A DNA stretch of 64,000 nt from Perna viridis (Eukaryota), in NCBI GenBank assembly GCA_037379345.1, contig CM074511.1:27100862-27164861 (forward strand), given 5' to 3'. The translations under genes were made by a program, and so were the position numbers. Below the pieces are notes generated by a model. The model did no database searches. It saw only the letters and a list, made by a program, of their open reading frames with translations, and was not told the origin of the DNA. This document shows, piece after piece, positions 8,302 to 25,779 of this stretch (the stretch's first letter is position 1; each line of letters starts with the position of its first letter).

Positions 8302-9594
8302 TCATGTAGCCGTCAAACTAGCTCACCATTCAGACATAGGGCTACTTGTATGCATCGACTGGAATTACATGATAATAAAATTTCACGAATAACTAAACGC
8401 TCATTATCCTACCAATGTACCTGGTCTATTATAGAGTCGTTTGTATTATATCATTTCTTCTGATTTTTGATTGTTTGTTTGTTATAGGTTACGATTTTAT
8501 CACTGTCTTTTTCTTGATGTCGTAAAAAAATGCGATAAAACTTAATTTCAACTATTTCAGTGCCATCTAGCATGGACCACAAGGAAAAATAACACAAGTA
8601 CAATTTGTATCATAACATTTGACTTTATTTCTAATTATTTTGGGAATGATTTTTGAGATCACGTCCATAAAATGTTAAAACAAGCAAGTTTATGGTCATT
8701 TTTTATTTGCTACTTACAGCAAGACGCTGTGTGTTAGAAATAAATGTGAATCATCTACAACAAAATTAAGAATGTTTTATCATTTCAACAATATCATTTG
8801 TTTGTTCATTCAAATAGGTTGTAAAACACGTTACATGCTTCAGAAGGTTTTCTGACAAGAAGAGTAAAACCTGGATCATCCGACACCTCAGTACATTAGA
8901 ATCATGTATGATCTGAAACTTTTTTGTTGAACAGGATACTGATATTTTCTTCTTTCGATAAGGTGAATTTCCCCACAATTTTCTTGTCGGAAGATATGTC
9001 AGGTTTAAACTTTTCCACTGCATAACAATCACAGCCTCTTTTTAACCTTCCTTAAAGTTTAAAGGCAAAAAAAACAGTAGCGGTTTGTAAAAACTAAAAC
9101 TTACAAACCGACACTGATGTGTCAGTTTGACAAAAGTAATGTCGGGCCATCACATCATTATTCATTTATGTGAAAGTTTAAAAATTTGGTATTTGAACTA
9201 TAAAACGACAAAAAGCGTATTAAGTAAAATACAAAAATGAATATTTTTGATAGAAAAGGTTGTTTTCGAAATTGTAGTATACGTATAAGTATTGTAAATT
9301 CTAGTAGCATGATAGAAAACGGTATTCCGGAATTGATCGATTATGTTTACTTAATTAGTAGAATATATAAGTCTTAACATTAATCATGTTTTGAAAAAAA
9401 ACTTTACAATATTTCAATATTCAATATTTCTTTAAAATCAAAGATAACATTAAATCTTTATCCAAATAACAAAATAATAACAAAACAAAAACAGTATGGT
9501 TAAGCCGGAAAGAAAGTTCAGCCAATCACAGCCCTGGGAATTCGTGATTTCCCTGAGAGACACGTAGAATCTTCAGAGGATCGTCTCGGGGTAA

Positions 9595-9759
9595 TTACGG
9601 CATGCCAGTTTGCTGTTTTATCCAGTCCACGTAAGACGTAACTCTTGTGAAAACACTGGGATATCCAGGTTTGTCACAATCTTCCGTTCCCCACGATACG
9701 ATACCAGTCAGGTAATATCTCCCATTGTACTTGCAGGACATTGGACTTCCGGAGTCTCC
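9595..9759 (-). CDS. protease exon 8 (catalytic Ser, stop)
   Basis: [54 protein letters not shown]. Confidence 0.95.
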
Positions 9760-12700
9760 CTAAAATACGGAATAAACTAAATGGAAATTAAGGTATTTCT
9801 TAGCTTACTACAACTTCTTTTATTGATTTCGATATTTTTAAAATCCGTGTACAAGATCTAAATACAAAAGCGCATCAAATGAAATCTAAATAATTAAAAG
9901 GGTGTTATTGTTAACGATCAAAGTTAACTGTCAAATGATAAAAAAGATGCTGAATTCACTCACTGAGCAAGGTCCAAAGGTTCCATCTCCGAAACAGACC
10001 ATATCATTGTCCATGTTTGTCTTCCAGAACTCGCTACATCTCGTATTACTGATCACGTGACCCTGGACTTGCCGTAATGATGCCCCAGTAGTACTTTCCT
10101 CTGCAATAGTTAATGTAACACAATACGATATACATGTAATTTCCAAAAGCTTATACATGTTGGAGGCCATAACAAATCCATTCGGTGGCATAGATTAGTT
10201 CTATGGAAAGCCAGCGGAGTCAAATTCTTAATTCGTTTATAGTCAATTCGTTAATAATTGTAAAAGTATAATTTCAAAATTCGTAATTTGTAAAAATCAA
10301 TGTCTATTTGTAAATTGTTACCATGTAAAATCCTAATTTGTAATTCATAATACGGGTTTTATAGTAATTTTACAGTAAATTATCGTCTCCCGGATAAGGT
10401 TCACACTTGAGATGTTCTCCCATAGTTATTTCTTATTATTATACCTCAGTATATAAACATCAATACAAAATTTTCTACAATAAAATTGCTATTTTTCTCC
10501 TTTTTCAGTGTTTGACTATTGACCGGCAATGTCAACCGCTTTCGCGGATTTTTAGTTCCGTCACCGGATTGGACAAAAGTTTTATATTTATTCGGAACGC
10601 TCGAACTTCACCCTCTCTTAATGAAAACCCCGAAATTATCACGTCTACTCGTTTTGTCTGCTGAATCACAAAGGGCAAGGTTTGCCTCCTTAACTGACCA
10701 GGATTTGGACACAATTATTGGCCAAAGGACTCTAAAAACACAAAATCCGTTATACGCGTGTCGAAAAGGATTTTAAGTGACTATCTAATAGAAAAAGATG
10801 GGGAATTTACGTCAATTGATGATCTTCTGCTGAAGTTACATGTTATGCCAAACAAATCCATGATAACCCTTCGCTTTGGGTTGCAGAAACATTTTCTCAA
10901 AAGTAAAAATGAGGACATTATAAACAGTGATGCGTTTTCCGGTGCAAATGAAATGTTAAAGTCAGTTTTGGTCAAATTATCAAAGGAAGGTTACGGGACA
11001 GTTCGTCACAAGGACGTTATTATACGTGAGGACTTACAAAAACTGTACAATCACCAAAAGTTTTCTTGTAAAACACCAGAATCTCTACAGAAAAGGGTGT
11101 TGTTTTTTTTGTTACATTTAATTGTCATTCAATAATATTGTTAACTCTTTATTATTTTTATTTTACTCAATACTGCATACTGGCATGCTCTTCAACAAGT
11201 CTTGCACTTTAACACAGATGAAATTGAATGTTTGCGAGACAATATTCAAATATGTACATTGTTGCTGTTCTTTATCTTACAGACAATTGCTGTTGAAGGC
11301 TACTTTCTGAAAATTCAAACTTCTATGAATTACTGGTGAAAAGGTCAATGAGACAACGTTCAGGTTAAAATATTGCCAAAAGATGCATGGTTTTCTGGGT
11401 TTTGAACATTTTGAGGTGATGAGGGGAAATATCAGTGACATTGAAATAGAAAATATCGTAAAAACGTTTTTCTGGGTTATCATTTTGAGATGATCATTCA
11501 ACCATGAACAATGGTGGGATATGGAGTAAATATATTACAAGTCTAATGTTTTCGGTATAATAAAATACTTATAGACTGGGTATTCGGGAAATAGCAAGTT
11601 TGTTGTTCCCCTCGACTGTGACTATTGCCCGTGGAACAAACTTGCTATTTCTCTCATACCCAGTCAATTATATAATGTGCATAGGTCTCGTTTTCGAGTT
11701 GATTTCAAACAGCTCATTCTCAGGTAATGTTTTGTCATTTCAAGATTAACAATGAAATATAAACTCTCAGAATTTGTTTAAAGAAAGACAAAAAAACTGA
11801 ATTTAGTTGACTGCACAATGCATTTAATCAACAAATGTAGCTTTTGAACTTCGCAGTTTTCAAAAATGAACATTTTACATACTGGCTTTTTAGTATGAAT
11901 GTAGGATGCATCGTTAGATGTATACAATGTCATCCACGAATGACAATTACACTTACCTTTCGTGTCTCCCCATCCTGTTACCCAACACTGGTCAGAGTTC
12001 TCTACATCAAACAGTTCTACACTATTACTTTGTTCTCTCTTGAATCTAATGTGGTTTACCATATTCAATTTTGTCTTGAAAGCATCAGGCAAGTCTAGGC
12101 GGCTAATGTACTCATTCACTAATGTATCCCGCGGTACAGAGTTATCGTTCCTTTTGATATTGTTGGAGTTGAATTGAGGATCACCGCTCAAGGGAAGACA
12201 AATTGCTCTGACGTAATCAGAGGTCAGGTCGACTGGTTCTGCCAGCTCAATAAGAGCAATGTCATGCTTGTACTGTTTATGAATAGGAATACTTTCGTTT
12301 TCTTCTACGGCGTCTCTCTGATCGACCCTATAGTATGGATGCTATAAAAAATAGTTTGGACACTTTAAATGACATACATGTACATGTACATGCATTGAAA
12401 AAATACAGAAATTCGTAAAATAGTTCGGATTCAGTATTTAATATTTTAACGTGTGTTCTTTCACATTTAGATATTAAAACAAATATTGATTTCTGTTATG
12501 AAAATATTTTTATTAACAAAATGAATGTCTCAAAAAGTTTTTTTTTAAAGTTGAATGTTAGATACGTTTTGTAACATACACTTTCTTAAGTGCAAAAAAT
12601 AAATACGAAAATTGTCATTTATTACATTCGTTAATCGGTAAGATTTTTGGTGTCATTACATCCAAAAATTAAACGAATGATAGCAAAAATACATATCAGA

Positions 12701-15700
12701 ATTTATAACACCTTACTCTAATAATTCTCCTTATTGGTACATCCGTTCCAGTATCCCCCTCATACATAAAATGAAGTCCAACAGAAACCCGCCAACTAGA
12801 GGGGTCGTTGTACATACTACAATATAAATGAATACTTATCGTCATTGTGTGGCAATAATATGATGAAAGAAAGACCAGTTATTTGATTCGATGACATGTC
12901 GTATATTATTTTGCATAATAAAATTACTAATATTTAGTTTAAATCATTACACTGAATCTAGGGACAAATTCTTGGCTGCTTTAAGTTACTCATTTAAAAA
13001 AATCGTATCAAATTGTGGAGAACAAAACAAGGATCATAATTTTACTAATTCATTACCCCCTCAAGCAGTGTGCAGCAGTCACAACCCATCTGTCACTGAT
13101 GAGAGCTCCACCACATATGTAGACGCCAGTCAAAAACCGCAGCGCCACCTGCCATGGCCAAGCACCACGTGGTGCAGTAGATCCACCAATTATGCGTTTA
13201 GATCGATGTGGGAAAGCTGGTATACCACAAGTATCCCCTACAATAAGTTGTATGTTTATCATGAAATAAATTCTAACCTAGGTTATATACTATAGACAAC
13301 GAAAGGTTTTATTCCTTTGATATCGTAAAGGTTCAAGGTCTTTGATTAAAGGATTTTTCATTAAAAATATTACCAGGTTAATTTCTAATGGATTCCAGTC
13401 CTGAGTCATAAAGGTTTTCAGTTCTGGGATTATAAAAATTGTGGACTGCGGACGTTAATGACGTCACAGTACCAAAACATTTCATACAAAATAACCTCCA
13501 TCGGAAGTACTCGGCTATTTCCCCCACATTACAAATAACCTCGGATGCAAAAAGGATAATTGCTTCTTGAAAATTGAAGTGATATGCGTATCAAAGTAAG
13601 TGCTAAAGCATTTAGTTAGATATCACTATAGAAATGAAGAACAATTATAACGCTAACAAGAATTAAGCGCATTTTGAGCAGCTAAGAAAAAAATGATGGG
13701 AAAAAATCAACCAGTTTAAACACAATTTTAGAATCGAATCGGGCAAATTCCGGACAGATTCTTGCGTTTTTCTTTTATAAAGGCCGAGTAGTTCGATTGA
13801 AAATAAAATACATGCATATAACAATAGTTAATAAACAAACCTAAGAGAGGGATCATAACAGATCAAATTGAATTAGTAAAAAAAATGGGAATATTTTACT
13901 CAAATCACAGGGGCTTGCTCCTACTATCTAATATGCAACCTCACTAGTATAGGTTATATTCTATTGGGCTGCTTATTTGATAGTGGGAGCAAGCCCCTGT
14001 GCACATATCATATGAAGTAGCATCATATTTTATTGAAAACTCTGTGAAATGTACCTGGATTTATAATGGCATTAGGCAATTCCTTTTGTGTGGTGGTGGT
14101 TGGCGCCAATGTCGTTGTCGTCTGCATCGCTCTTAATCTCGCTACTTTAAAAGAAACGAGCCTTTATAAGCTTTGTTAATTTTATTATATGAAGATATTT
14201 TTATTTTTAATTTCTGTAAAAAAACTAAAAACTTTTTGTCATGGCTTTCGTGTAAGATAACAACGAATTTAAATAGTCCACGAAAAATAAACTTTCAAAA
14301 AGGAGCTTCTGTGCTCTTATACAGAAGCCCATGAACCAACGAAATTTCAACAAACCACGAAAGTTTATATACTAGTACACCGCATAACTTCAATTTCAAT
14401 ATTTTTTTTGGATTTGCAGGAGAAACTTAATAATTATTTCTTTTTCTTTAGACACAAATTGATAATAGTGAAGAAGGTGAAAAAGTTAGAAATCTGTCAA
14501 CAGCAGTCACTAGGCGATCCCATCCGGTCTCCTCTTTAGAAACCGTATGGTCAAAAATAATTTATAGCTCAAGTCTGGCCCCACACTATGACATGCAATA
14601 CTTAAATAAAACTTCTATCAAAATATCAACTGGACAAATGAATTAAAAGGCGAACGGATAGACAGACGAACTTTTTTAAAGCGTGGGTATAAATACGAAG
14701 GGAAAATCTGAAGCTCTCGCACTGCTTACCATAATCCGGTGGTGCACAGCAACTATCACTTGGAGAAGAGCACAAAGATATCCCCCATGAATGTACAAAT
14801 TTGAATTCACACTGTGGGTTGCATGTCCCTTGTAATAAGTTACAAAGTTCGTACTGGTAACCAACGGCATAACCTATAAAGATTGAAAAAAAAGAGTAAT
14901 TAAAAAAAAATAATCACAAGCTTTCGTAATCAAGATGACATGAGTGCTTCTTTTGGAAAATATCGGTGCACCTTGTCAAATGATTAGTTTCAGTAGTTAC
15001 TAGTGACAGAAATTATTGTGATGACTTTATTATTGCGAAAAATGCTACTGATATTAGATTGCATTTGATAAAATTGCATCCGTTTAAAAAATAAAATGAA
15101 GTTTTCAGAATGTGATATGACTTTAAGTGGCATTTACGACGTAGTTGACAAAATCTAAATAATTAATGCACAAAATAACTTCGGAGTTTGATGTAAATCC
15201 CGTCTGTTTTGGTGTTAAATTTTCTGTGTTTCGTCGTTTGGATTTAAGCTGCATATATCTTCTGTTTTTCTCGATTCTTCTTTTTTCCCAATTTTCGAGA
15301 CCCATTTTTTTCTGAATATTTTTTAAAAATCTTTTTATGTTCTAAATTGTAATCTATGACCAAGTATTGTAATCTGTTTATAGTTCTTCTTTGTCCATTG
15401 GTTTTTATATTAGAATATACTCTGAAATCCTTGCTTTGACAAAAAAATACCTAGCTTATCATACAGATGGTTGCAATATGCGATTGATTTTAGCATTTTA
15501 TACAGTTGTACTGAATAATCGGAATTACAAAAAAAATTGTATATCATCAATGGTAACGATGAATTAAACTCAATCAAATTGTATTCAAATATCCCGCCAA
15601 TTATTCGAAAACCTTCAAAAATGTAAAAATTCTTTGACACAATGTCAATAGGAACTTTATCATAAATAACTCGTTTGAAAATATAGTCAATTTGTTATTT

Positions 15701-18700
15701 CTGTCTTGAATGCGTTTCAGCTATTCTGTTATCAAGCCTTCCCTGATTTAGGAGAGATATCAGATGTATTTATGTCGTAATGATGACCTATTATCAATGC
15801 CATCACCACAGGCTTGCTAGGTTCTCACACAAAAATATTAAATTATCGATTCATTTCGATATAGCGATAACAATGTTTTTATTTTAGGTGTTTTTGATAT
15901 ATATAAATAGAATAGTGGAATAGTTTTCGCAGATATGTCAAAATGTACTGGTTCAATGAGATGATTAAGGCACAATCTTACTAATTTTAATAAATGAAGT
16001 TTTTATCATCTTAATGATGTAAAAATCATCGGCTATATTTCGCGGTAACTGCAAGACCTCCCAAACCATCAATGGTTACCTGTGTATATGTTAAGTTCAA
16101 CATTAATTATCTCTAGAATCACATTACTGAAAATCAGAGTGTGAAGATACAAGTAGCAAGAATAAATAGGCGAAAAAAAAACGCTACTTTTTCGCCCTGC
16201 TTTTCCACAGTTGAATACAGGTACAAGTAAATGGGCTTATGATTATATCCTTTCCCCAGAAACAGAGCCTTGACCAAGAAAAAAGAAACAAACATTTTCA
16301 TTATAGAATGAATGAGTTGCCTAGGTCCCACTAAAATTTTGAATATGGATCAGGTGCACAAGTAGGGCAAGCGTTAATTGAAGACACAAGTAGAATTGCC
16401 AAAATGAACGAATCAGATGCACAAAAAAGTATGACTGTAGTTTGATTTTTAAAAAAATCTTCCTTCAAATAAAAGTATAAACATTCTCTTGAATTCCAAG
16501 TAAATTTTAAGCATGCATACGTCAATCTAGATTTGAGATTCACAAATAACATTTTATCAGCTCAGCTGGGCAGTGCCAGGTATTACTAACTAAATATGCG
16601 AATATTAAATCTTAATCTACGATCGACTATCAATATCTTATAATTATTAATATTGATTAAAAATATAATTTGAATTATTTCGCTATTTTTCATATTTAGC
16701 TTACTTAAGACATACGTGTAAGAGTAATCAAGGGAACCAAGGTTATAGCGGTAATCAAAAGAATGTAATCCAGGGACAAAGACCAGACATGGAAAATAGA
16801 CATACACAACAAAGAACTTAATGCAACTAAAATCATAGATACAAAATAACAAAAGCAAATGAGCAACTCGGACTCCTCTAAAAACTGGGAGCATGAACCA
16901 GGTGCACCGGTAAGGTAAGCGTTCTCCATGCACTCCATTTTATCATCGCTGTACCCAAAGCGATTGCAAGGGATTAGATAACGACATTAATGACCAACCC
17001 ATGGTTAAACGATGATAAAATTGAGATTCCGTGATTTATTGAGATTCTACAGGACTCTATAGTTTCTTCTTTTTTAATAGACGCAGCCCATGTGTTGCTC
17101 GACATATTAGAATTTGTATTTTTCTAAGGATGCAAACTTCAAGGTTTAATATCGTGTAACTTTATTGCACTAGTAAATTCTAAAACTATACTTGTATGCT
17201 TCTAAGTATAAATTCATTGCTTTCATGGCTCTCCTTGGGTACTAATTACTGGTGTGAATAATATGTCAAGTATCTATTTTTACTCATACGTTATTTGTTT
17301 AAGCTAATTAGTATAGTATCAAAATTACTATCCCAATACTGATATTGTGAATGAAATTCCTTGCTGAAGTAATATAAGACAGGAATGCATCTTATCAATA
17401 CTCCTACAAAGATCTGAATCTCAGAATAAAACAATTCATTATCTAGTTCATTCATAGATTGACCCAATCAGAGTGATTGGCTAATGAGGGAAGAAAATAA
17501 TTTCCGGTACCAATACGATACCTAGGCTATTTCAAGTATTATATGGTTAAAGGAAAAGGTATACATGCTGGTATGTAAATATTAAAGAAACATGAACGTC
17601 ATACAATGAAGATAGAGAAGGACACTTCAGACAAAAATAAACCACTTTTTCTCTTTATATAGTTTCATAACGATAATAAATTGATAAAATTAACGTATGC
17701 AAGCTTGCATTAGAAGGAAGGTCGAAACAAGGTGATTGTGGCCTAACGCAAACATAATAAATGTTACTGAAAATAGTAAATACGCAACCTGTGAGGGCCA
17801 ATTTTTTTTAATAAGTAATCGTTTGTTTTTCATTGTAAAACATGCAATGTCGTTTCTCGTAAGATAAAAAAGACATTTAGGAAAACTTAATTGCAAACAA
17901 ATTATTTGCAAAACAGCTTTACATAATATTTCATTGCATTTTGAAAAATAAAAAATATTACCAGTCCACATTAAATTCAGACAATGTCTATAGAACAGGG
18001 GGATTAATGTTGTAGAAAATCCCATCAAACAAACCTTTTAATTTCATATACAATCTAATCAACTGAATCTCAAAAGGGGCAAAAACCGAATAACATACTA
18101 AGACGGGTTTGAGACGTGCATGAATCACCTCTCATCTGATATTTATACACATTTCTATGTAAATGTACTCGAGCCAAACAGTCTTTCTTTCTCAACAATT
18201 TTCTGAGCCGTTGAATATACCATGTAAAATTGCATTTTTTACAATTATGCATTATTAAATCATATCATGATAGATATAACGAAACGCAACCTAGTTATAT
18301 CATATAATTATTTTGATATTTTCATTCATTCATGTTTGTCGTGGGTGGATATTATTTCATTAAATATTTTCCATAATAGTTATTTCATTCATGAATTCCC
18401 AGACAAACCTTGGGAGTAAACTTTGCATGAAACACTGAAGAGATAACGTTATATTTTGTAAATGGTTTGTGTTGAAATTTTCTTTCTGTCAAACACTCCT
18501 TTTTACTTATTCAATTAATGATTTGTATGAAAGGAATTTCCATATCGACAGAAAGTCTTTTTAGTACCCCTGAGAAATTATGCTTGTTACAAATTTAAAA
18601 CGAGTTCGTTATTTTCTTTTTGCTAAATATTTTCTCTTAAATATTGGTTTCGTATGTACTAGACCAATTTCCACAACAATATGAGGTTTATTTTTTAGTA

Positions 18701-21700
18701 GAACTGGTTCAAAATAAAAGACATTAATTTTCCTTAACTTTAAGAACTAAGTTGTAATCAATCCCTCTATTTAAAAAAAAATAAAAAAACACCAAACTTG
18801 GTACTAATTTTCCGTCTCTGATTTATACGAGACGTAAAATAATCAACATAGTTATTATAGTGGATTATACTGGGTACCATTTTGTTCATTTTTCTGTGTA
18901 CACAACATCGTTCTTTTGTGTTGTATGATTTCTTCTATGGTCTTGTTTTAGTTTCAATTTTCTTTCCGGAATTTCCTATGTAGAACGTAATGAAATCCGG
19001 AGACCGATAAGCCTTTTATTATTAATGTCTGTGATATCGAAACGCTTCATTACAATGAATTTATTTTTATTTTACGTTTTTTCTTAATACTTTCACAATG
19101 TATAAATATATGTTTGTCATGTTTTATCAGAACGACGTTTTACTTTTAATACTGAACTCAATGCTCGGTAATCAAAAAAGGTTTCCATGCATTTGAATGG
19201 GCGATAACGACCCATTCTCAGGAAACCGTAGATTCACGTGACGAGACTTGCATACCCTTTTGTCATTTTGATATTGCGGGTAATGTTTTATTTATGAGCT
19301 TTCACTTCTATCATAGGTATTGCTACACTTCAGTTTGTGTGGAGGAGTTTATTTAATATTAACTGTTCGTCGATATTGGATGATATAACTTTTTTTTATT
19401 TATTTGTGCGTCTTTGTTTCTATTATATTTGTCAATTGATAAATATTAATAAGTGATTAATTCATCTGTATCATACATAATTTGTTGTAGCTTTGTATGC
19501 GATCGAATAAATCAATGAGCACTCTTTGATTACTAATGATTACTAATTCTCTTTAACTAAAAGAACAATGCGTTGAGAACCCGCACAATCCGAAGACCTA
19601 TCTAAACCAATCACTTTTTCAACTGCTTTATATCAATTTTGATGCGTTTTGAACCATTGTAAAGCAAACGCGTGTATAATCCGAAACAAAGTCCAAAAGG
19701 ATTTGACTTTCTTATTTAAGACCGACGTATGATTTTATATGCTGCAATGGTGAGAAAAAAAATTGAATTTTATTTTTGCGATTCCGAGTTAGTCGCAAGA
19801 CCACTTGACACTAATACATTGTATGAGACAGGTGTTACTTGTTAGAGGACAAGATTATAAGGTAGATGAGCCTCTTCGAAAGATCTTAAAATGGGTGTCG
19901 TCCTGTGTCTTAAGTGTTTTGGAACGACTTGTCTGCTGACCGTTGTCCATTATTTTTACACACAAGAACTACTATACAACTTTCGCTGCACTTTTGTAAT
20001 ACGATAAAGAGTGAGTAGTTCCGATTAGTCTTTGCCGAGCAAACTAGTTCCTTTCAGATTGAAATCAGACCCTCAGTGGGTCTAAGGTCATAGGTTGAAT
20101 TCATAGAAATTACCGTTACGCATGCTTTGTTCTTCATCATTATTCAAAGAATTTGTAGGTCAGTCCACAAAATATTAGAACTTAACTTGAACCACATATT
20201 ACTTTGTCAGCTTTGAAAATTATTTCAGTCTTATTCTATCTAGACCTTTTCTAAATGAATCTATTGACGACCCTGAATCAACCTTAGATTGATAATATGC
20301 AAATTGAATGCGTCAATCGTGATTACCTTAACGAATCGGAAATCCACTGCGACTCTTTCGTAAATTCATTATCGGTTTCAAATAATGATAAACTTTGCTG
20401 ATATGGGTCATTTAGGGCTATACGAGAAGTCCATTGACTTTAAACCTACGCACGCAAAGAACTTTAAAAAGCAACATGTCCCCACACATATATATATATA
20501 CCCAGGGTCCTGATAGTCTTACTTATATACTTTGAAGGTAAAGACATTATCCTTTCAAATAGTAAAATTTATTCATAACAGTGAAATGGAGGTAAATCTG
20601 CATTTCAGACATTTTTTTTAAACTCGACTGTGAATGAACATCAGTTTAAGTGAGGAAGTACAAATAAAACCAATTAGATAAACCCCATCCCAACCCTCAA
20701 CATCCAAACACAAGAGGCTCAGAAAAAGCCTGAATCGCTCACCTAGCAAACCATGCCTATTAACTAAGTAAGTAAAATTATCATGATTTGTTACAATGTT
20801 TGACAATAAAATGATGATAAAGGGCATATATTCATGAATGCTGTAATTTCAAATGAGCACCTAAGGCGCTGTAAAATGGACCCGGTCCGGGTGTCAAAAG
20901 AATAGCCCTGCAGCAGCGCTAAGCTTGTCGTAAAAGGCGACTAAATAGTGCTCAGAACCCTAGCCGGGGGCTAGGGCGCTCTGCCCACAGAGCAACTGGG
21001 TTGTGTGCCCCAGGTGGTGGAATGGGGTACCCATGGCTTGTTACATGCTTGGGTTGTCAAGCTATAATACGGAAAACCTGACCGCAAACTATAGTGGTGC
21101 ACCGTGTTGGGAAAGATGCCTCGTTCCTTGCACTTTAAAGAACCCTACTGTGGTATTCTCCCGGAGTAGGAACCATAGGACTCCGCCACAGGAAGCCAAA
21201 TTGCCCGACCCTACCCACCTCTCCCTATTGCCAGTGGCAATCAAAATTTGTCGACCCCATTGTCCTTGTGTCCCATCACTTTTTCTTTTCATCATCATTT
21301 CATGTTTATTTTATCATCAATTTCATGTTCATCTTCTGAATATAGCTGAAATATTGCTGCTCGGACGTTAAACCCCAACAAACAAACAACGCTGTAAAAT
21401 GTTGGAAGTGCCTTCAAAGTGTTTTAGAACCTCTGAAAGAAATTTGGGCAGGAATCCCCCATGCCCTGTTATTTCCCAGAGTCTGAAGGGGCATTAGCCT
21501 AGTATAAATTTGCTGAAAAATAACACACAATAAAGAAAAACCATGGCTATACAACATTTTCATCATATCTATTCAACTCAGGAGACCATTTTTACTTTAT
21601 ATACTAAATACCGTTGAAATCAAAACAAGTATAAAAATTAGCGAGAAAATGGCCGCCCAAAACAAACTTTCGTCATCACTATTAAACTTAGAACAAAATA

Positions 21701-24700
21701 TTTCGTAAAGAAACAAAAATCATTGGAATCCAATCAACTGGCTAAATGGTCACGAAATGGCCGTCTAAAACAATTTCGATACTGCCATTCAACTCAGAAT
21801 ATCATATTTGTCTGATGAATACCTTTCATTATTATGATCAGTTTGTGTAGGATATCCTAAAAACAATTATTCCAACTTTCACTAAATTTTTCGCATGGTT
21901 TTAGAGAAGAAGACTTTCAAAGCGAACAAAGACAAAAAATCTGTTTCAGGGGCCATAACACCTATATCGGGCGACGAATCAATTTGATAATTTCGGCATA
22001 GGGCCGTCTTCTGATGCTGACCAATATTACCTTCAATCAGAATTTTGCTGAATTCAACGGTTTTTGAGGTATTGGTAAAATGCCAACATGGGTCAACAGA
22101 TATTCACCATAGTTTGACACAGATAGATCTCATCATGATAAACAATTTTACTCCATGTCATAATTTGGTTAAACCTAACTGTTTTGGGGATAAATGAAAA
22201 AAAGTGCTGTCTGACGCCTATCTTCAACTACAGTAACAGCGGCCATATTTTTTTCACGGATCAAATATCTAAACGGTCATTTAGTGCAGAATACCCTCTA
22301 AAACAGCCATGCTAAGTTTTATCCAAATCCATTCAGTAGTTTCAGAAAAAAATTGATAAAAAAATTGTTAACGTCGACAACGACGACAGACGCCAAGTGA
22401 CGGCAATAGCTCACATGGCCTACGGAAAGCTGAGCATAAAAGCTAACCAATAACAGTTTATGGTAACTAAAAATAAAGGAATGAATTAAGTAGTGTAAAC
22501 ATTAGAGATATTTTGTAGTTTATTCAGAGCTTGATTACGATGGGTTCCATAATATAACGGAATAAAAAAGAAAATACAAAATGACCGATTATATAACATG
22601 TAATCGTTGTTCTGGTGTTATTCAGTGTAAACAGTTTGTCTTTCCATATTACAATGACCATTACCTTATGAACTGACTAAGGTACTTAGGAAGTTCAGAA
22701 GGAGCTTAAAACTTTCTATCAGACATAATATAAAATAATTTTATAATATACTTTTTGCCCCTGGCGAAGAACCTAAGGCCGAGAATTTGTACACATATCC
22801 TTTACATTTTTACATTTTATTTATATTTTAATTGTATGTAGTTACTTTTTAACTTTTAAACGTGGCTGTTATGGCACCTACATATGGAGTTTTCATATTA
22901 CTGCTCATACGTTTTGCCAGAGCTTGCCGGAACAACGCAGACTTTTTTGTATCGCGCTAGACGTCTTACAATAAGGCTTCTGGAACAGGGTTATCTTTCT
23001 ACAAGATTGATGTCATCACTACAGAAGATCGTCACCATGAATTAGTGGATCTTTACGGTGTAACCATCTGCACCATGAAAACTAATTTGTTCAAAGTGTC
23101 AGAAGTTTCCTTTCTTCTTTCGTCTACCCCGGACTTGACAATTGATGAGCAACTCGGCAAGTACTTCTAGAAAAGCAGAGGACGCTTAACCTACCAGTGC
23201 ACCTGGTCCATGCTCCCAGTTTTTAGTGGAGTCCGAGTTGCTCATTTACTTTTGTTAATTTATATGTGTTATTTCAGTTGCTTTATGTTCTTTGTTGTGT
23301 TTGTTGAATGTCTGGTCTTTGTCCCCAGATTACATGCTGTTGGTTTCCGCTAGAATCTTGGTTCCTTTGATTACTCTTTCACTTTTCATCATTTTTATTC
23401 ACGTTTAATTTGGGCTACTTCACAACATATATTAATACATACATATGTATATATATGTGATAAATGTGAATTTTTTAGGTGAGTAACCGGTCCTTATATT
23501 GCAATTTGACTCCAAGTATCAATATGCATTTGCTTTATTATACTTTTTTAAAATGTAGTTTCTTCTTATCATTCCCTTGGAGGAAAAGAGGAAACATACC
23601 ATATTTCATAAAATTTGACAGTGAGGCAGTCCATATAATTTCTTACAGGTCGTTATATGGGCCAATAGATATAGCGGAAAATGTATGCTTATATAATTGT
23701 GCTCTAAAATCCTAAATTATTCAAATATTGTACGCATTATATCATTGAGTTTCCCTGACAAACGACGTAACGACCTAGTGATTAACAAAGACATTTTTTA
23801 TTTTGTCAGGAAATTGCACTTCAATACCTAATCCTCGAGACCTAATCACGAATCATTCATATCAAATGAATTCATGTCGTAGTTATTTTTAAATTCTAAA
23901 CAAAGACTAAATGGTCCTTATTGTATCGAAAACGAAGTTCCTAAAATTTCGATGCACTTTATAATCACTCATCATTTTTGTAGGGGGGAAATTTCGACGC
24001 TTTACTTGTAATTTCTGCAACAACGTTGGTTTTGAACTGATGAAATACTTCTTAAGCATTAACAATTGTTTTGAGTCTTGCTTATGGCATAAGCTTTGCA
24101 TTGATTGCAATTATGTACAAATTATATAACCTCTTGTGTAAAGCAAATGACTAGTTCCCATCTAAATTATTTTATAAATTGGAATTTACAGAATGAACAC
24201 ATTAAACTGGTTAGCATATTTTAAGGTTTTTGTTAAAGAAAAAGGAAATCCTTTTAAAAATATGTTAAAGAGTTTGGATTATGTATTTTGTATGGAATAT
24301 GTAAAGGATAAATTACAATAAAAAGACATATGATGAATTGTAGTAATCAATTAAGTACTAAAATTTGTCTAAATAAAATAGCGACATTGTTACCAATGAG
24401 TCCATTTCATTTGTATCTTGGACGAGTGTTGGCAAAATTTAAGTTTAGAAACTAAAGGTACTTAGATGTGGACATATGAATAAATGTCTATTTCTTTGTT
24501 TCCTCAATGCTAAACAGATATATTATTAAATGTATTATTAAACTGGAGTCATGAACGGATTTTTTCTTGGTGTAAAGAGTGAAAAACTCGTGTCAATTCC
24601 ATAATTAGAATTTATTGCTTGTAAAGTTAGTTTCTTTTTTATTTCTAACGAAATTTTGGTAGAAGATCGTATACAAATTGTGAATAATAATGCCACATTC

Positions 24701-25779
24701 TGTTTATCATTTGGGCATTAAGTATCAGTCCCTGTAAGAATCAGGCAATAGGTGAAACATGGTATTAAAAAAAACCATCATTTTAATAGTGTAATTTGAA
24801 AATTTGCACCATCCGAAAAAAGTAAATATTTTCCATATCATGTTCGACCATTGATTTACAATTTCATTAAAATGCACTGACAATGGACATTTCAAGGACA
24901 GATAACTGTCGAAAACCTCATTTTTCTCATATTTTATCGGAAAATTCCTGAGCAAATGTAATGATGCAAAGATCAAATATTGGTCTTTTCAAATAGCACC
25001 CTAGAGTGACATTTTATTGTCAGATCGGTGGTGTTTTGACATGCATTTTTCTGCTTTTTCCTGATTCTTACAAACACGTTAATATCATCATATCAATTTA
25101 CAAGATATTTTAATGGAAAACTCTGACTCCTTGTCTTTGCAGTACATTACCTGCGAATACTAAAAAAAAACTGTCTTCGACAGCAGAAATAAATATACAA
25201 CATTTGATTACGGTGAAAAACTCACTACTTCGGTTGACAAAAATCAGAGAAATTATAATTTTTAAAAACAGTTAAACGTACATATATATGTGTTTGATCG
25301 AACATATACCATGTTAATACCTAAATAATGCTTCTGTCTAAAGAGTGACAACAGAGAGTACATGTATATACTGATAATCTGCATCGATCAAATAAGTGAT
25401 TATATATTCGTTCGATAATATTTGTAGTATCTAATTTGCTTGTACAATTAATTAATTAATGAAAGACACACCAACTTCTACATACAATTAATTATTCCCT
25501 GGCCACATAACTAGTCATATATTTGATACTGCCGTAGAGATGTCTGTTAAATGCATGAATCTTTTCTTTTCTTTTCTACGGTTTAATCAAATATTTAACC
25601 TAATTTTGTTTTTATAACGAATCAAAACGTACAACAGGTATACAAAATGTTATATGATATAAAAATATGGCTTTGAATGTAAATAAATAAGACAACTTAC
25701 CTGTAGCTTGTTCAAATGTTAGTATCATTGATGCAACCAAAATAATAACTATGTTCTCGCAGATCTGTAGAGTGTTCAT
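9595..25779 (-). CDS. Secreted chymotrypsin-like S1A serine protease with N-terminal beta-defensin-like module; 8 exons, 426 aa
   Basis: Exons 25779-25701, 14873-14730, 14144-14055, 13237-13057, 12816-12717, 12341-11957, 10100-9964, 9759-9595. All introns GT-AG, phases match, 1281 nt open. Motifs IIGG, TAAHC, DIAL, GDSGSP, SWG; the five canonical disulfide pairs are present. Confidence 0.9.
9964..10100 (-). CDS. protease exon 7
   Basis: [45 protein letters not shown]; ttgcag|...|gtgagt. Confidence 0.93.
10655..11110 (+). mobile_element. Crypton-like tyrosine-recombinase (DUF3504/KCTD1-ZMYM-related) ORF remnant inside the protease intron between exons 6 and 7
   Basis: [14 protein letters not shown] / frameshift ~10725 / [21 protein letters not shown]...LRFGLQKHF...[14 protein letters not shown]...KEGYG...HKDVI...DLQKLY...TPESLQKRV; breaks off before the expected catalytic RG.E motif. 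Confidence 0.7.
11574..11665. repeat. palindrome, 31-bp arms (3 mismatches), probable end structure of the Crypton-like element
   Basis: GACTGGGTATTCGGGAAATAGCAAGTTTGTT ... AACAAACTTGCTATTTCTCTCATACCCAGTC. Confidence 0.8.
11957..12341 (-). CDS. protease exon 6 (catalytic Asp; two large insertions)
   Basis: HPYY...[26 protein letters not shown]-(68 aa)[10 protein letters not shown]; tatag|...|gtaagt. Confidence 0.93.
12717..12816 (-). CDS. protease exon 5
   Basis: [33 protein letters not shown]; phase 2/0 fits both neighbours. Confidence 0.9.
13057..13237 (-). CDS. protease exon 4 (activation site, catalytic His)
   Basis: [14 protein letters not shown]|[16 protein letters not shown]...[18 protein letters not shown]. 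Confidence 0.95.
13906..14001. repeat. 96-bp foldback hairpin (mini-MITE-like)
   Basis: CACAGGGGCTTGCTCCTACTATC...GATAGTGGGAGCAAGCCCCTGTG, ~35-bp arms. Confidence 0.85.
14055..14144 (-). CDS. protease exon 3 (Thr-rich linker)
   Basis: [29 protein letters not shown]; 90 nt, phase 1-1. Confidence 0.8.
14730..14873 (-). CDS. protease exon 2 (six-Cys beta-defensin-like module)
   Basis: [47 protein letters not shown]; tttatag|...|gtaagc; 144 nt, phase 1-1. Confidence 0.82.
16720..16926 (-). mobile_element. Penelope-like 3' fragment
   Basis: Matches family 3' end. Confidence 0.8.
20879..21389 (+). mobile_element. TSD-bounded SINE-like retroposon (RTE-like head, Meta-like core, (CAAA)n tail)
   Basis: Perfect 12-bp TSD CGCTGTAAAATG at 20867-20878 and 21390-21401; GCTTGTCGTAAAAGGCGACTAA in the head; GCACTTTAAAGAACCC core; second copy at 1-357. 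Confidence 0.85.
21624..22440 (+). mobile_element. Helentron/HINE-like non-autonomous element
   Basis: (GAC)-type microsatellite followed by the 3' hairpin GCTCACATGGCC...GCTGAGC; repeated AAATGGCCG motifs; 5' boundary approximate. Confidence 0.5.
22873..23378 (+). mobile_element. Penelope-like 3' fragment with decayed RT C-terminus (subfamily B)
   Basis: [15 protein letters not shown] homology plus family 3' end. Confidence 0.8.
24722..25078. mobile_element. ~350-bp TTAA-flanked MITE (GTGTCAGTCCCTGTAAGAATC family)
   Basis: Ends TTAA-GTATCAGTCCCTGTAAGAATC ... GATTCTTACAAACACG-TTAA; 4 copies. Confidence 0.75.
25701..25779 (-). CDS. protease exon 1 (signal peptide)
   Basis: AAAAATG context; [27 protein letters not shown]|gtaagt, phase 1 matches exon 2; joined across a 10.8-kb intron by inference. 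Confidence 0.7.

What the first reader, a model, noticed from the sequence alone, without database searches (positions are those of the whole stretch)
14730..14873. Beta-defensin-like domain fused to a secreted serine protease (candidate molluscan analogue of clip-domain proteases)
Seen: the first exon after the signal peptide encodes C-x6-C-x3-C-x12-C-x6-CC with a G-T-C at the second Cys. It is a symmetric phase 1-1 exon followed by a Thr-rich stalk and an intact S1A domain. The supplied ORF track misses it because it reads a different frame. Known: vertebrate beta-defensins are about C-x6-C-x3/4-C-x9-C-x6-CC, big-defensin C-terminal domains are about C-x6-C-x3-C-x13-C-x4-CC, and arthropod clip domains share the 1-5/2-4/3-6 disulfide topology but have longer spacing. 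Inference: an exon-shuffled defensin fold serves as the regulatory or recognition head of a protease. It is net acidic, so it is more likely a binding module than a cationic antimicrobial. I do not recall this architecture being described, but I cannot search to confirm.
Basis: partly seen in the sequence, partly recalled or inferred. Interest (0 to 1): 0.82.

Follow-up and report, generated by a model that had tools for sequence, protein, structure and literature searches.

The report
Six-cysteine head on mussel protease
A real, expressed mussel gene for a secreted serine protease starts with a small, conserved six-cysteine module that no database names; it sits where arthropod proteases carry their clip domain and has a defensin-like cysteine pattern, but its fold and origin remain unproven.

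Summary
Window 14873-14730 (minus strand) is a 144-nt phase 1-1 exon encoding C-x6-C-x3-C-x12-C-x6-CC. Spliced transcript contigs from four runs in four studies join it to the signal-peptide exon 11 kb upstream, to a Thr-rich exon and to six S1A protease exons.

The same signal-module-stalk-protease architecture, with the module as its own phase 1-1 exon, occurs in single-copy orthologues of Mytilidae and Pectinidae. All six Cys and an ELC..L.G.C...C..KFVH.W.I.LC......CC.P core are invariant. dN/dS is 0.02-0.07. All these proteins carry generic automatic names and only a Trypsin Pfam domain.

The fold claim is not settled:
- No Pfam defensin or CLIP model matches.
- AlphaFold gave pLDDT 65 and 52, and structure searches found nothing.
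- The only PDB sequence hit is beta-defensin 106, at a non-significant E of 4.4.
- Language-model look-alikes are arthropod clip domains (0.80-0.83, lead level only).

Cys spacing fits defensins in all four gaps and group-1 clip domains in all but C2-C3.

A conserved R-x-K-R|IIGG site and a linker Cys suggest convertase activation with the module left disulfide-tethered. I read it as an orphan, clip-analogous head: a new variant of a known design. The scan had not noted it before on other DNA.

The parts
25701..25779 (-). Exon 1, coding part: ATG at 25779 and a signal peptide ([27 protein letters not shown]). It ends in phase 1 before gtaagt.
   Evidence: Sequence. The loose end of RNA contig X1 matches 25703-25732 exactly. 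Orthologues start with comparable signal peptides. The ATG itself is not covered by the listed contig.
14730..14873 (-). Exon 2: the six-cysteine module (C-x6-C-x3-C-x12-C-x6-CC). It is 144 nt, phase 1-1, and is the finding itself.
   Evidence: joints on both sides; same exon limits in 5 other genomes; conservation; purifying selection, charge -3.
14055..14144 (-). Exon 3: Thr-rich linker (..[30 protein letters not shown]), 90 nt, phase 1-1. It is probably an O-glycosylated stalk.
   Evidence: In scallops the equivalent Thr/Pro-rich stretch is about 130 residues and gives a weak, sub-threshold Mucin Pfam match.
13057..13237 (-). Exon 4: linker Cys (DTCGIP), activation site HRSKR|IIGG, and the catalytic His (TAAHC).
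   Evidence: Trypsin E 6.5e-16; C, R-x-K-R, IIGG invariant.
12717..12816 (-). Exon 5: protease domain (..[28 protein letters not shown]).
11957..12341 (-). Exon 6: catalytic Asp (HDIAL), the Cys122-equivalent (ICLP), and a 65-80-residue charged insert with basic sites (RFKRE).
9964..10100 (-). Exon 7: protease domain up to ..GTFGPCS.
9595..9759 (-). Exon 8: GDSGSP (catalytic Ser) to the stop codon. The 3' UTR runs on to at least 9100.
   Evidence: Trypsin E 1.1e-13; contig X1 covers 9100-9758.

Best explanation
The exon encodes the N-terminal head of a secreted, multi-domain S1A serine protease of about 426 residues. The gene is single-copy and conserved in mussels (Mytilidae) and scallops (Pectinidae).

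The head is a lineage-restricted, unannotated six-cysteine disulfide-knot module. Its cysteine framework is the one shared by beta-defensins, big defensins and clip domains. It occupies the position that clip domains hold in arthropod proteases.

Proposed mechanism:
1. The signal peptide is removed.
2. A furin-type convertase, or another Arg-specific protease, cuts at the conserved R-x-K-R|IIGG site.
3. The head and its O-glycosylated Thr-rich stalk stay bound to the catalytic chain through the conserved linker Cys (CG.P), paired with the Cys122-equivalent (ICLP).
4. The acidic head then acts as a tethered binding or regulatory module, not as a free cationic antimicrobial peptide.
5. The enzyme has a non-tryptic S1 pocket (G189, G216, S226 by motif position), so it should not activate itself.

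Shown here: exon structure, splicing, transcription, conservation, purifying selection, and conserved cleavage and tether motifs. Inferred: disulfide pairing, fold, convertase cleavage, binding role. Whether the module descends from a defensin, from a clip domain or from neither is unresolved.
For: - Splicing and transcription: (four runs, four studies).
- Orthologues with the same architecture: Mytilus spp., another mytilid, Ylistrum, Mizuhopecten, Pecten and Argopecten.
- The module is its own phase 1-1 exon in five other genomes.
- Nineteen invariant positions, including all six Cys.
- dN/dS of 0.02-0.07.
- Single copy in the 723-Mb genome and in the window.
- Invariant C-G-x-P, R-x-K-R, IIGG, H, D, S and ICLP.
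- Trypsin Pfam hits on exons 4, 6, 7 and 8.
- The nearest named clusters in language-model feature space are arthropod CLIP and CLIP_1 domains, for both the mussel and the scallop module (0.80-0.83).
- No canonical CLIP or CLIP_1 domain clearly over cut-off was found elsewhere in this genome, so the position may be otherwise unfilled.
Against: - No significant similarity to any named domain: Pfam is empty for the mussel module and the PDB sequence search gave only E 4.4.
- The language-model scores are below the tool's own 0.9 reliability line.
- AlphaFold models are of low confidence, so even the presence of a compact fold rests on Cys conservation alone.
- The catalytic domain is closest to kallikrein, chymotrypsin and tryptase, not to clip proteases.
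- A furin-type site implies constitutive activation, unlike regulated clip cascades.
- No functional, tissue or binding data exist.
Confidence: 0.6

Rival explanations
1. One reading: the module is a true trans-defensin (beta-defensin or big-defensin fold, Cys1-5/2-4/3-6), captured by exon shuffling from a defensin gene.
For:
- A phase-1 intron lies just before the Cys domain, as reported for big and beta-defensins (PMC7203481).
- Both AlphaFold runs predict only strands and coil, with no helix.
- The sole PDB sequence hit is beta-defensin 106, with all six Cys aligned (E 4.4).
- Bivalves own big defensins (PMC7203481), and big-defensin charge can be anionic (same paper).
Against: - PF00711 and PF14862 do not see the exon, even at E of 10 or less.
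- hhalign against the genome's own defensin-like exon gives a probability of 1.5%.
- No stand-alone short relative was found.
- The exon is internal, whereas, as far as I know, the Cys domain of big and beta-defensin genes lies in the last exon.
- Phase 1-1 exons are the commonest kind for extracellular modules, so intron phase is weak evidence.
- The PDB hit is not significant and reflects the very pattern under test.
Confidence: 0.25
2. The module is a divergent but homologous clip domain. The gene would then be a true molluscan clip-domain protease.
For: - Same position and architecture: signal, 6-Cys with adjacent Cys5-Cys6, linker with tether Cys, then S1A.
- The Cys1-Cys2 gap of 6 (range 2-10) and the Cys3-Cys4 gap of 12 (group 1: 8-17) fit PMC4676143.
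- 'CC-x-P' follows, as in clip domains (from my own knowledge).
- The nearest language-model clusters are CLIP and CLIP_1, for two orthologues that are 50% identical to each other.
Against: - PF12032 and PF18322 give no hit.
- The Cys2-Cys3 gap is 3, not the constant 5.
- Cys1 to Cys6 spans 33 residues, against 37-55 for clip domains (PMC4676143, PMC7005593).
- No helix is predicted.
- The catalytic domain is not nearest to clip proteases.
- The activation site is furin-type.
Confidence: 0.2
3. The module is an unrelated small disulfide-rich fold that converged on the C...CC framework. It would be either a new fold or merely a structured activation-peptide cap with no binding role.
For: No significant match was found by any sequence, profile or structure method used. 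The family is narrow, limited to two bivalve orders.
Against: Strong purifying selection, with an invariant surface-type motif KFVH.W.I, argues for a specific interaction. The framework and position coincide with known families on several counts.
Confidence: 0.2

Closest known systems
Arthropod clip-domain serine proteases (Pfam CLIP PF12032, CLIP_1 PF18322)
   Same: A secreted zymogen whose N-terminal 6-Cys module has Cys5 and Cys6 adjacent. It has a linker with a tethering Cys and a C-terminal S1A domain. The Cys1-Cys2 and Cys3-Cys4 gaps fall within the clip (group 1) ranges. It is the nearest neighbour in language-model feature space.
   Different: There is no HMM match. The Cys2-Cys3 gap is 3 instead of 5, and the module is shorter (33 residues from Cys1 to Cys6). 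No helix is predicted. The activation site is R-x-K-R (convertase type). The catalytic domain is closest to kallikrein and chymotrypsin. The family is confined to mussels and scallops.
Big defensins and beta-defensins (trans-defensins; PF14862, PF00711)
   Same: The cysteine framework C-x6-C-x3-C-x(9-14)-C-x(4-6)-CC. A Gly lies two residues before Cys2. A phase-1 intron lies just upstream of the Cys domain. The predicted structure is all-beta.
   Different: There is no HMM match. The module is acidic (-3). It is an internal exon of a 426-residue protease rather than the terminal exon of a small peptide gene. No antimicrobial role is expected.
[quoted passage not shown] 2007, cited in PMC6920836)
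   Same: A bivalve protease reported to have an N-terminal clip-like domain and an S1A domain.
   Different: The paper is not in the library, so I could not check whether it is the same gene or module.
Two-chain S1A proteases with a disulfide-tethered light chain (chymotrypsin, plasma kallikrein, factor XI)
   Same: A linker Cys paired with Cys122, an IIGG new N-terminus after cleavage, and the best catalytic-domain similarity (E 1e-42).
   Different: Their N-terminal regions are unrelated (apple domains, or a short propeptide).

Membership tests
S1A serine protease (Trypsin, PF00089) | HMM match, His/Asp/Ser triad, IIGG N-terminus, conserved disulfides | tested here: met
   Exons 4, 6, 7 and 8 hit PF00089. 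Orthologue P0001 scores 193.7 bits. TAAHC, DIAL and GDSGSP are invariant.
Beta-defensin / big defensin | Six Cys spaced about C-x6-C-x3/4-C-x9-14-C-x4-6-CC | tested here: met
   The gaps are 6, 3, 12, 6. They are identical in all seven orthologue sequences.
Beta-defensin / big defensin | Match to family profiles (PF00711, PF14862) | tested here: not met
   No hit at E of 10 or less for any of 7 members. Genome-wide PF00711 and PF14862 scans do not list this exon.
Beta-defensin / big defensin | Three antiparallel strands with Cys1-5, 2-4, 3-6 pairing | tested here: inconclusive
   AlphaFold gave pLDDT 65.5 (three strands of 3 or more residues, plus two short bridges) and 51.9. Foldseek and VIA gave no meaningful match.
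Beta-defensin / big defensin | Phase-1 intron directly upstream of the Cys-domain exon | tested here: met
   The criterion is from PMC7203481. It is weak, because phase 1 is common for extracellular modules.
Beta-defensin / big defensin | Small secreted peptide, usually cationic | tested here: not met
   The module is part of a protease of about 426 residues and has a net charge of -3.
Clip domain (PF12032 / PF18322) | Six Cys with Cys5 and Cys6 adjacent, N-terminal to an S1A domain via a linker with a tether Cys | tested here: met
   The criterion is from PMC4676143.
Clip domain (PF12032 / PF18322) | Cys2-Cys3 gap of five residues; domain length 37-55 residues | tested here: not met
   The gap is 3, and Cys1 to Cys6 spans 33 residues. 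The ranges are from PMC4676143 and PMC7005593.
Clip domain (PF12032 / PF18322) | Cys3-Cys4 gap of 8-17 (group 1) or 22-26 (group 2) | tested here: met
   The gap is 12. The range is from PMC4676143.
Clip domain (PF12032 / PF18322) | Match to family profiles | tested here: not met
   No hit. Genome scans with PF12032 and PF18322 do not list the exon. There is only a lead-level feature similarity of 0.80-0.83.
Clip domain (PF12032 / PF18322) | Zymogen activated within an extracellular protease cascade | not testable with these tools
   The site is R-x-K-R|IIGG. By established knowledge of proprotein convertases, this points to furin-type cleavage.
Kazal (PF21288 Kazal_C6) | Profile match over the whole domain above cut-off | tested here: not met
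   Only three of the four scallop members hit, at 15-21 bits against a cut-off of 27. The match covers only profile positions 26-49. The mussel members give nothing.

The most novel reading that the evidence does not exclude
The module is a genuine trans-defensin (big-defensin-type) domain that was recruited as the tethered head of a protease in an ancestor of mussels and scallops. That would make it an independent molluscan counterpart of the arthropod clip domain, or a surviving link between defensins and clip domains.
Probability: 0.22. Interest if true: 0.7.

Novelty: new variant of a known kind. Interest (0 to 1): 0.42.

Why it matters
Clip-domain proteases drive clotting, melanisation and Toll activation in arthropods. 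As far as I know, they are generally regarded as largely arthropod-specific, and in this mussel genome I found no clear canonical clip domain.

A conserved, defensin-patterned, tethered head on a bivalve protease would show that molluscs use the same design: a small disulfide knot steering an S1A enzyme. If the fold proves defensin-like, it would bear on the old suggestion that clip domains and big defensins are related.

In practical terms, it defines an unannotated domain family. Seven or more RefSeq proteins currently carry misleading names such as 'plasma kallikrein-like' or 'neurotrypsin-like'.

Tried and rejected
- Pfam scans of the exon and of all seven module sequences gave nothing. 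The only exception was a partial, sub-threshold Kazal_C6 match in three of the four scallop sequences. I rejected it because the framework does not fit and the mussels do not hit.
- P0003, the third hit of the 1.84-billion-protein search, is a bacterial InlB-B-repeat protein that matches only a C..FV..W motif repeatedly. It is spurious.
- PDB sequence searches, by single sequence and by profile, gave only beta-defensin 106 at E 4.4 and 6.3, which is not significant.
- AlphaFold without an alignment gave pLDDT 65.5. With the 7-sequence alignment it fell to 51.9.
- Foldseek against PDB and VIA-align wide found no meaningful match; the best Z was 2.2.
- A search for stand-alone short relatives with the module alignment returned no candidates.
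- Paralogue searches in the window's own genome, by sequence and by profile, found only the exon itself. The next hit (20.8 bits) lacks the Cys pattern.
- hhalign against the genome's own PF00711-positive exon gave a probability of 1.5%.
- Literature searches by accession numbers and by clip/defensin/bivalve terms found no paper on this protein.
Whole-protein analyses used database orthologues (P0001 and others) instead.

Full report
**The observation**

On the minus strand, window 14873-14730 is flanked by an AG acceptor and a GTAAG donor. Read in phase 1, it encodes [47 protein letters not shown], which is C-x6-C-x3-C-x12-C-x6-CC with G-T-C at the second Cys. The window contains no N.

**Gene model and transcription**

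Stop-to-stop frames on the minus strand show S1A protease pieces downstream. Pfam Trypsin matches exons 4, 6, 7 and 8.

A run search returned 17 probable RNA runs that hold 5-21% of the sampled words of 9500-14950; the best of them (about 20%) hold roughly the exon share.

- All of them show intron-less joints with GT..AG on the gene strand: 14730>14144, 14055>13237, 13057>12816, 12717>12341, 11957>10100 and 9964>9759.
- One 2231-nt contig carries every joint.
- That contig runs on beyond 14873-14875 with 46 loose letters, the first 30 of which, as printed, match window 25703-25732 exactly. That is the end of the signal-peptide exon...caagctacag|gtaagt.

Phase arithmetic over the eight exons is consistent and gives about 426 codons. 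I did not build the joined protein for any search. Whole-protein work used database orthologues.

**Relatives**

An exhaustive HMMER search of 1.84 billion representative proteins with the 47-residue exon product found three hits.

- A 439-residue Mytilus californianus protein (83% identical in the module).
- A 508-residue Ylistrum balloti protein (55% identical).
- A bacterial repeat protein, which is spurious.

Word-index searches and cluster look-ups added four more Mytilus species, another mytilid, Mizuhopecten, Pecten maximus and Argopecten. All carry automatic names (plasma kallikrein-like, chymotrypsinogen B-like, neurotrypsin-like, stubble-like) and only PF00089.

The full-length alignment shows one architecture throughout:

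- a signal peptide;
- the module;
- a Thr/Pro-rich stalk of very variable length (about 20 residues in Mytilus, about 130 in scallops);
- an invariant C-G-x-P;
- an invariant R-x-K-R followed by IIGG;

In five other genomes the module is again its own exon with phase 1-1 boundaries. The module alignment has 19 invariant positions, ELC..L.G.C...C..KFVH.W.I.LC......CC.P. Synonymous sites are saturated between the window and Mytilus while dN is 0.10. Unsaturated pairs give dN/dS of 0.02-0.07. The exon is single-copy in the 723-Mb genome, both by sequence and by profile. The protease is single-copy in the window.

**What the module is**

No method gave a significant assignment.

- Pfam is empty for the mussel sequences. 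It gives only a partial, sub-threshold Kazal_C6 match for three of the four scallop sequences, which I reject.
- The PDB sequence search returns only human beta-defensin 106, with all six Cys aligned, but at E 4.4 (6.3 with the profile).
- AlphaFold gave pLDDT 65.5 without an alignment, with strands at 7-10, 22-26 and 31-35 and no helix. With the shallow 7-sequence alignment it gave 51.9.
- Foldseek and VIA-align found nothing.
- The ESM Atlas feature search puts arthropod CLIP and CLIP_1 clusters first among named clusters, for both the mussel and the scallop module (0.80-0.83). The tool itself calls this lead level only.
- A search for stand-alone short relatives found none.
- Scans of the window's own genome with PF12032, PF18322, PF14862 and PF00711 never list this exon. 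They find no clip domain clearly over cut-off.
- PF00711 does pick up a different phase 1-1 exon on contig C7 with C-x6-C-x3-C-x9-C-x5-CC. That exon is not detectably related to the module.

**Comparison with the known families**

Published clip-domain rules are as follows (PMC4676143, PMC7005593):

| Feature | Clip domains | This module |
|---|---|---|
| Cys5 and Cys6 | adjacent | adjacent |
| Cys1-Cys2 gap | 2-10 | 6 |
| Cys2-Cys3 gap | constant 5 | 3 |
| Cys3-Cys4 gap | 8-17 (group 1) or 22-26 (group 2) | 12 |
| Length | 37-55 residues | 33 (Cys1 to Cys6) |

The module meets the first, second and fourth rules and fails the third and fifth.

Against the defensin framework, all four gaps fit. 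The phase-1 intron before the Cys domain matches the hallmark reported for big and beta-defensin genes (PMC7203481). However, the module is acidic (-3), lies in an internal exon, and is invisible to the defensin profiles.

I found no paper in the library to cite for it.

**Mechanism**

By position relative to GDSGSP and SWG, the S1 pocket residues are G189, G216 and S226. This is an inference from standard chymotrypsin numbering. It makes the enzyme non-tryptic, so it should not cut its own R|I bond.

The invariant R-x-K-R fits the proprotein-convertase consensus (established knowledge). I therefore expect activation in the secretory pathway, or by a trypsin-like partner. The head and stalk would remain disulfide-tethered through the linker Cys. 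The strongly conserved, acidic head is most plausibly a binding or regulatory module, analogous to a clip domain. None of this was tested experimentally.

**Verdict**

- The gene is real, expressed and conserved, and its head domain is an unannotated family restricted, as far as the databases show, to mussels and scallops.
- The design (disulfide knot, linker, S1A domain) is the known clip-protease design, so I rate it a new variant of a known kind.
- Whether the fold is defensin-like, clip-like or new is open, and needs a structure or disulfide map.
- The catalytic domain's closest solved relatives are plasma kallikrein, chymotrypsin and tryptase.
- No literature on these proteins was found.
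- The scan had not recorded this module elsewhere.

Noticed in passing
window 11988-12191 (exon 6, minus strand): A charged insert of 65-80 residues between the two barrels of the protease domain, with basic motifs (RFKRE here; R-x-R-R in Mytilus and scallops). It is conserved in position across mussels and scallops and may be a second convertase site.
   Followed up: partly
L016:1502-1615 and L019:1499-1611 (own genome, contig C7, 41.868 and 41.881 Mb): A phase 1-1 exon encoding C-x6-C-x3-C-x9-C-x5-CC (GGTC at Cys2) scores 24.7 bits on PF00711. A related terminal exon lies 13 kb further on. Together they may be a multi-exon gene with beta-defensin-like modules. It is not detectably related to the protease head (hhalign probability 1.5%).
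   Followed up: partly
window 10480-11660 (intron 6) and 13430-14025 (intron 3): High-depth RNA contigs at 90-95% identity, with many loose ends clustered at 13964-14002. These are transcribed dispersed repeats inside the introns, not exons of this gene.
   Followed up: no
own genome G000, whole: Six-frame scans found no CLIP_1 (PF18322) hit over cut-off. For CLIP (PF12032) there was only one partial hit, at 20.2 bits against a cut-off of 20 (E 0.55). No big-defensin (PF14862) hit appeared at E of 1 or less. The scan is exon-by-exon and coarse, so this is a hint, not proof of absence.
   Followed up: partly
window 14874-25700: Intron 1 is about 10.8 kb long and separates the signal-peptide exon from the module exon. 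Mytilus and scallop orthologues also have long first introns: the module exon lies 7-12 kb into the gene in L005-L009.
   Followed up: no
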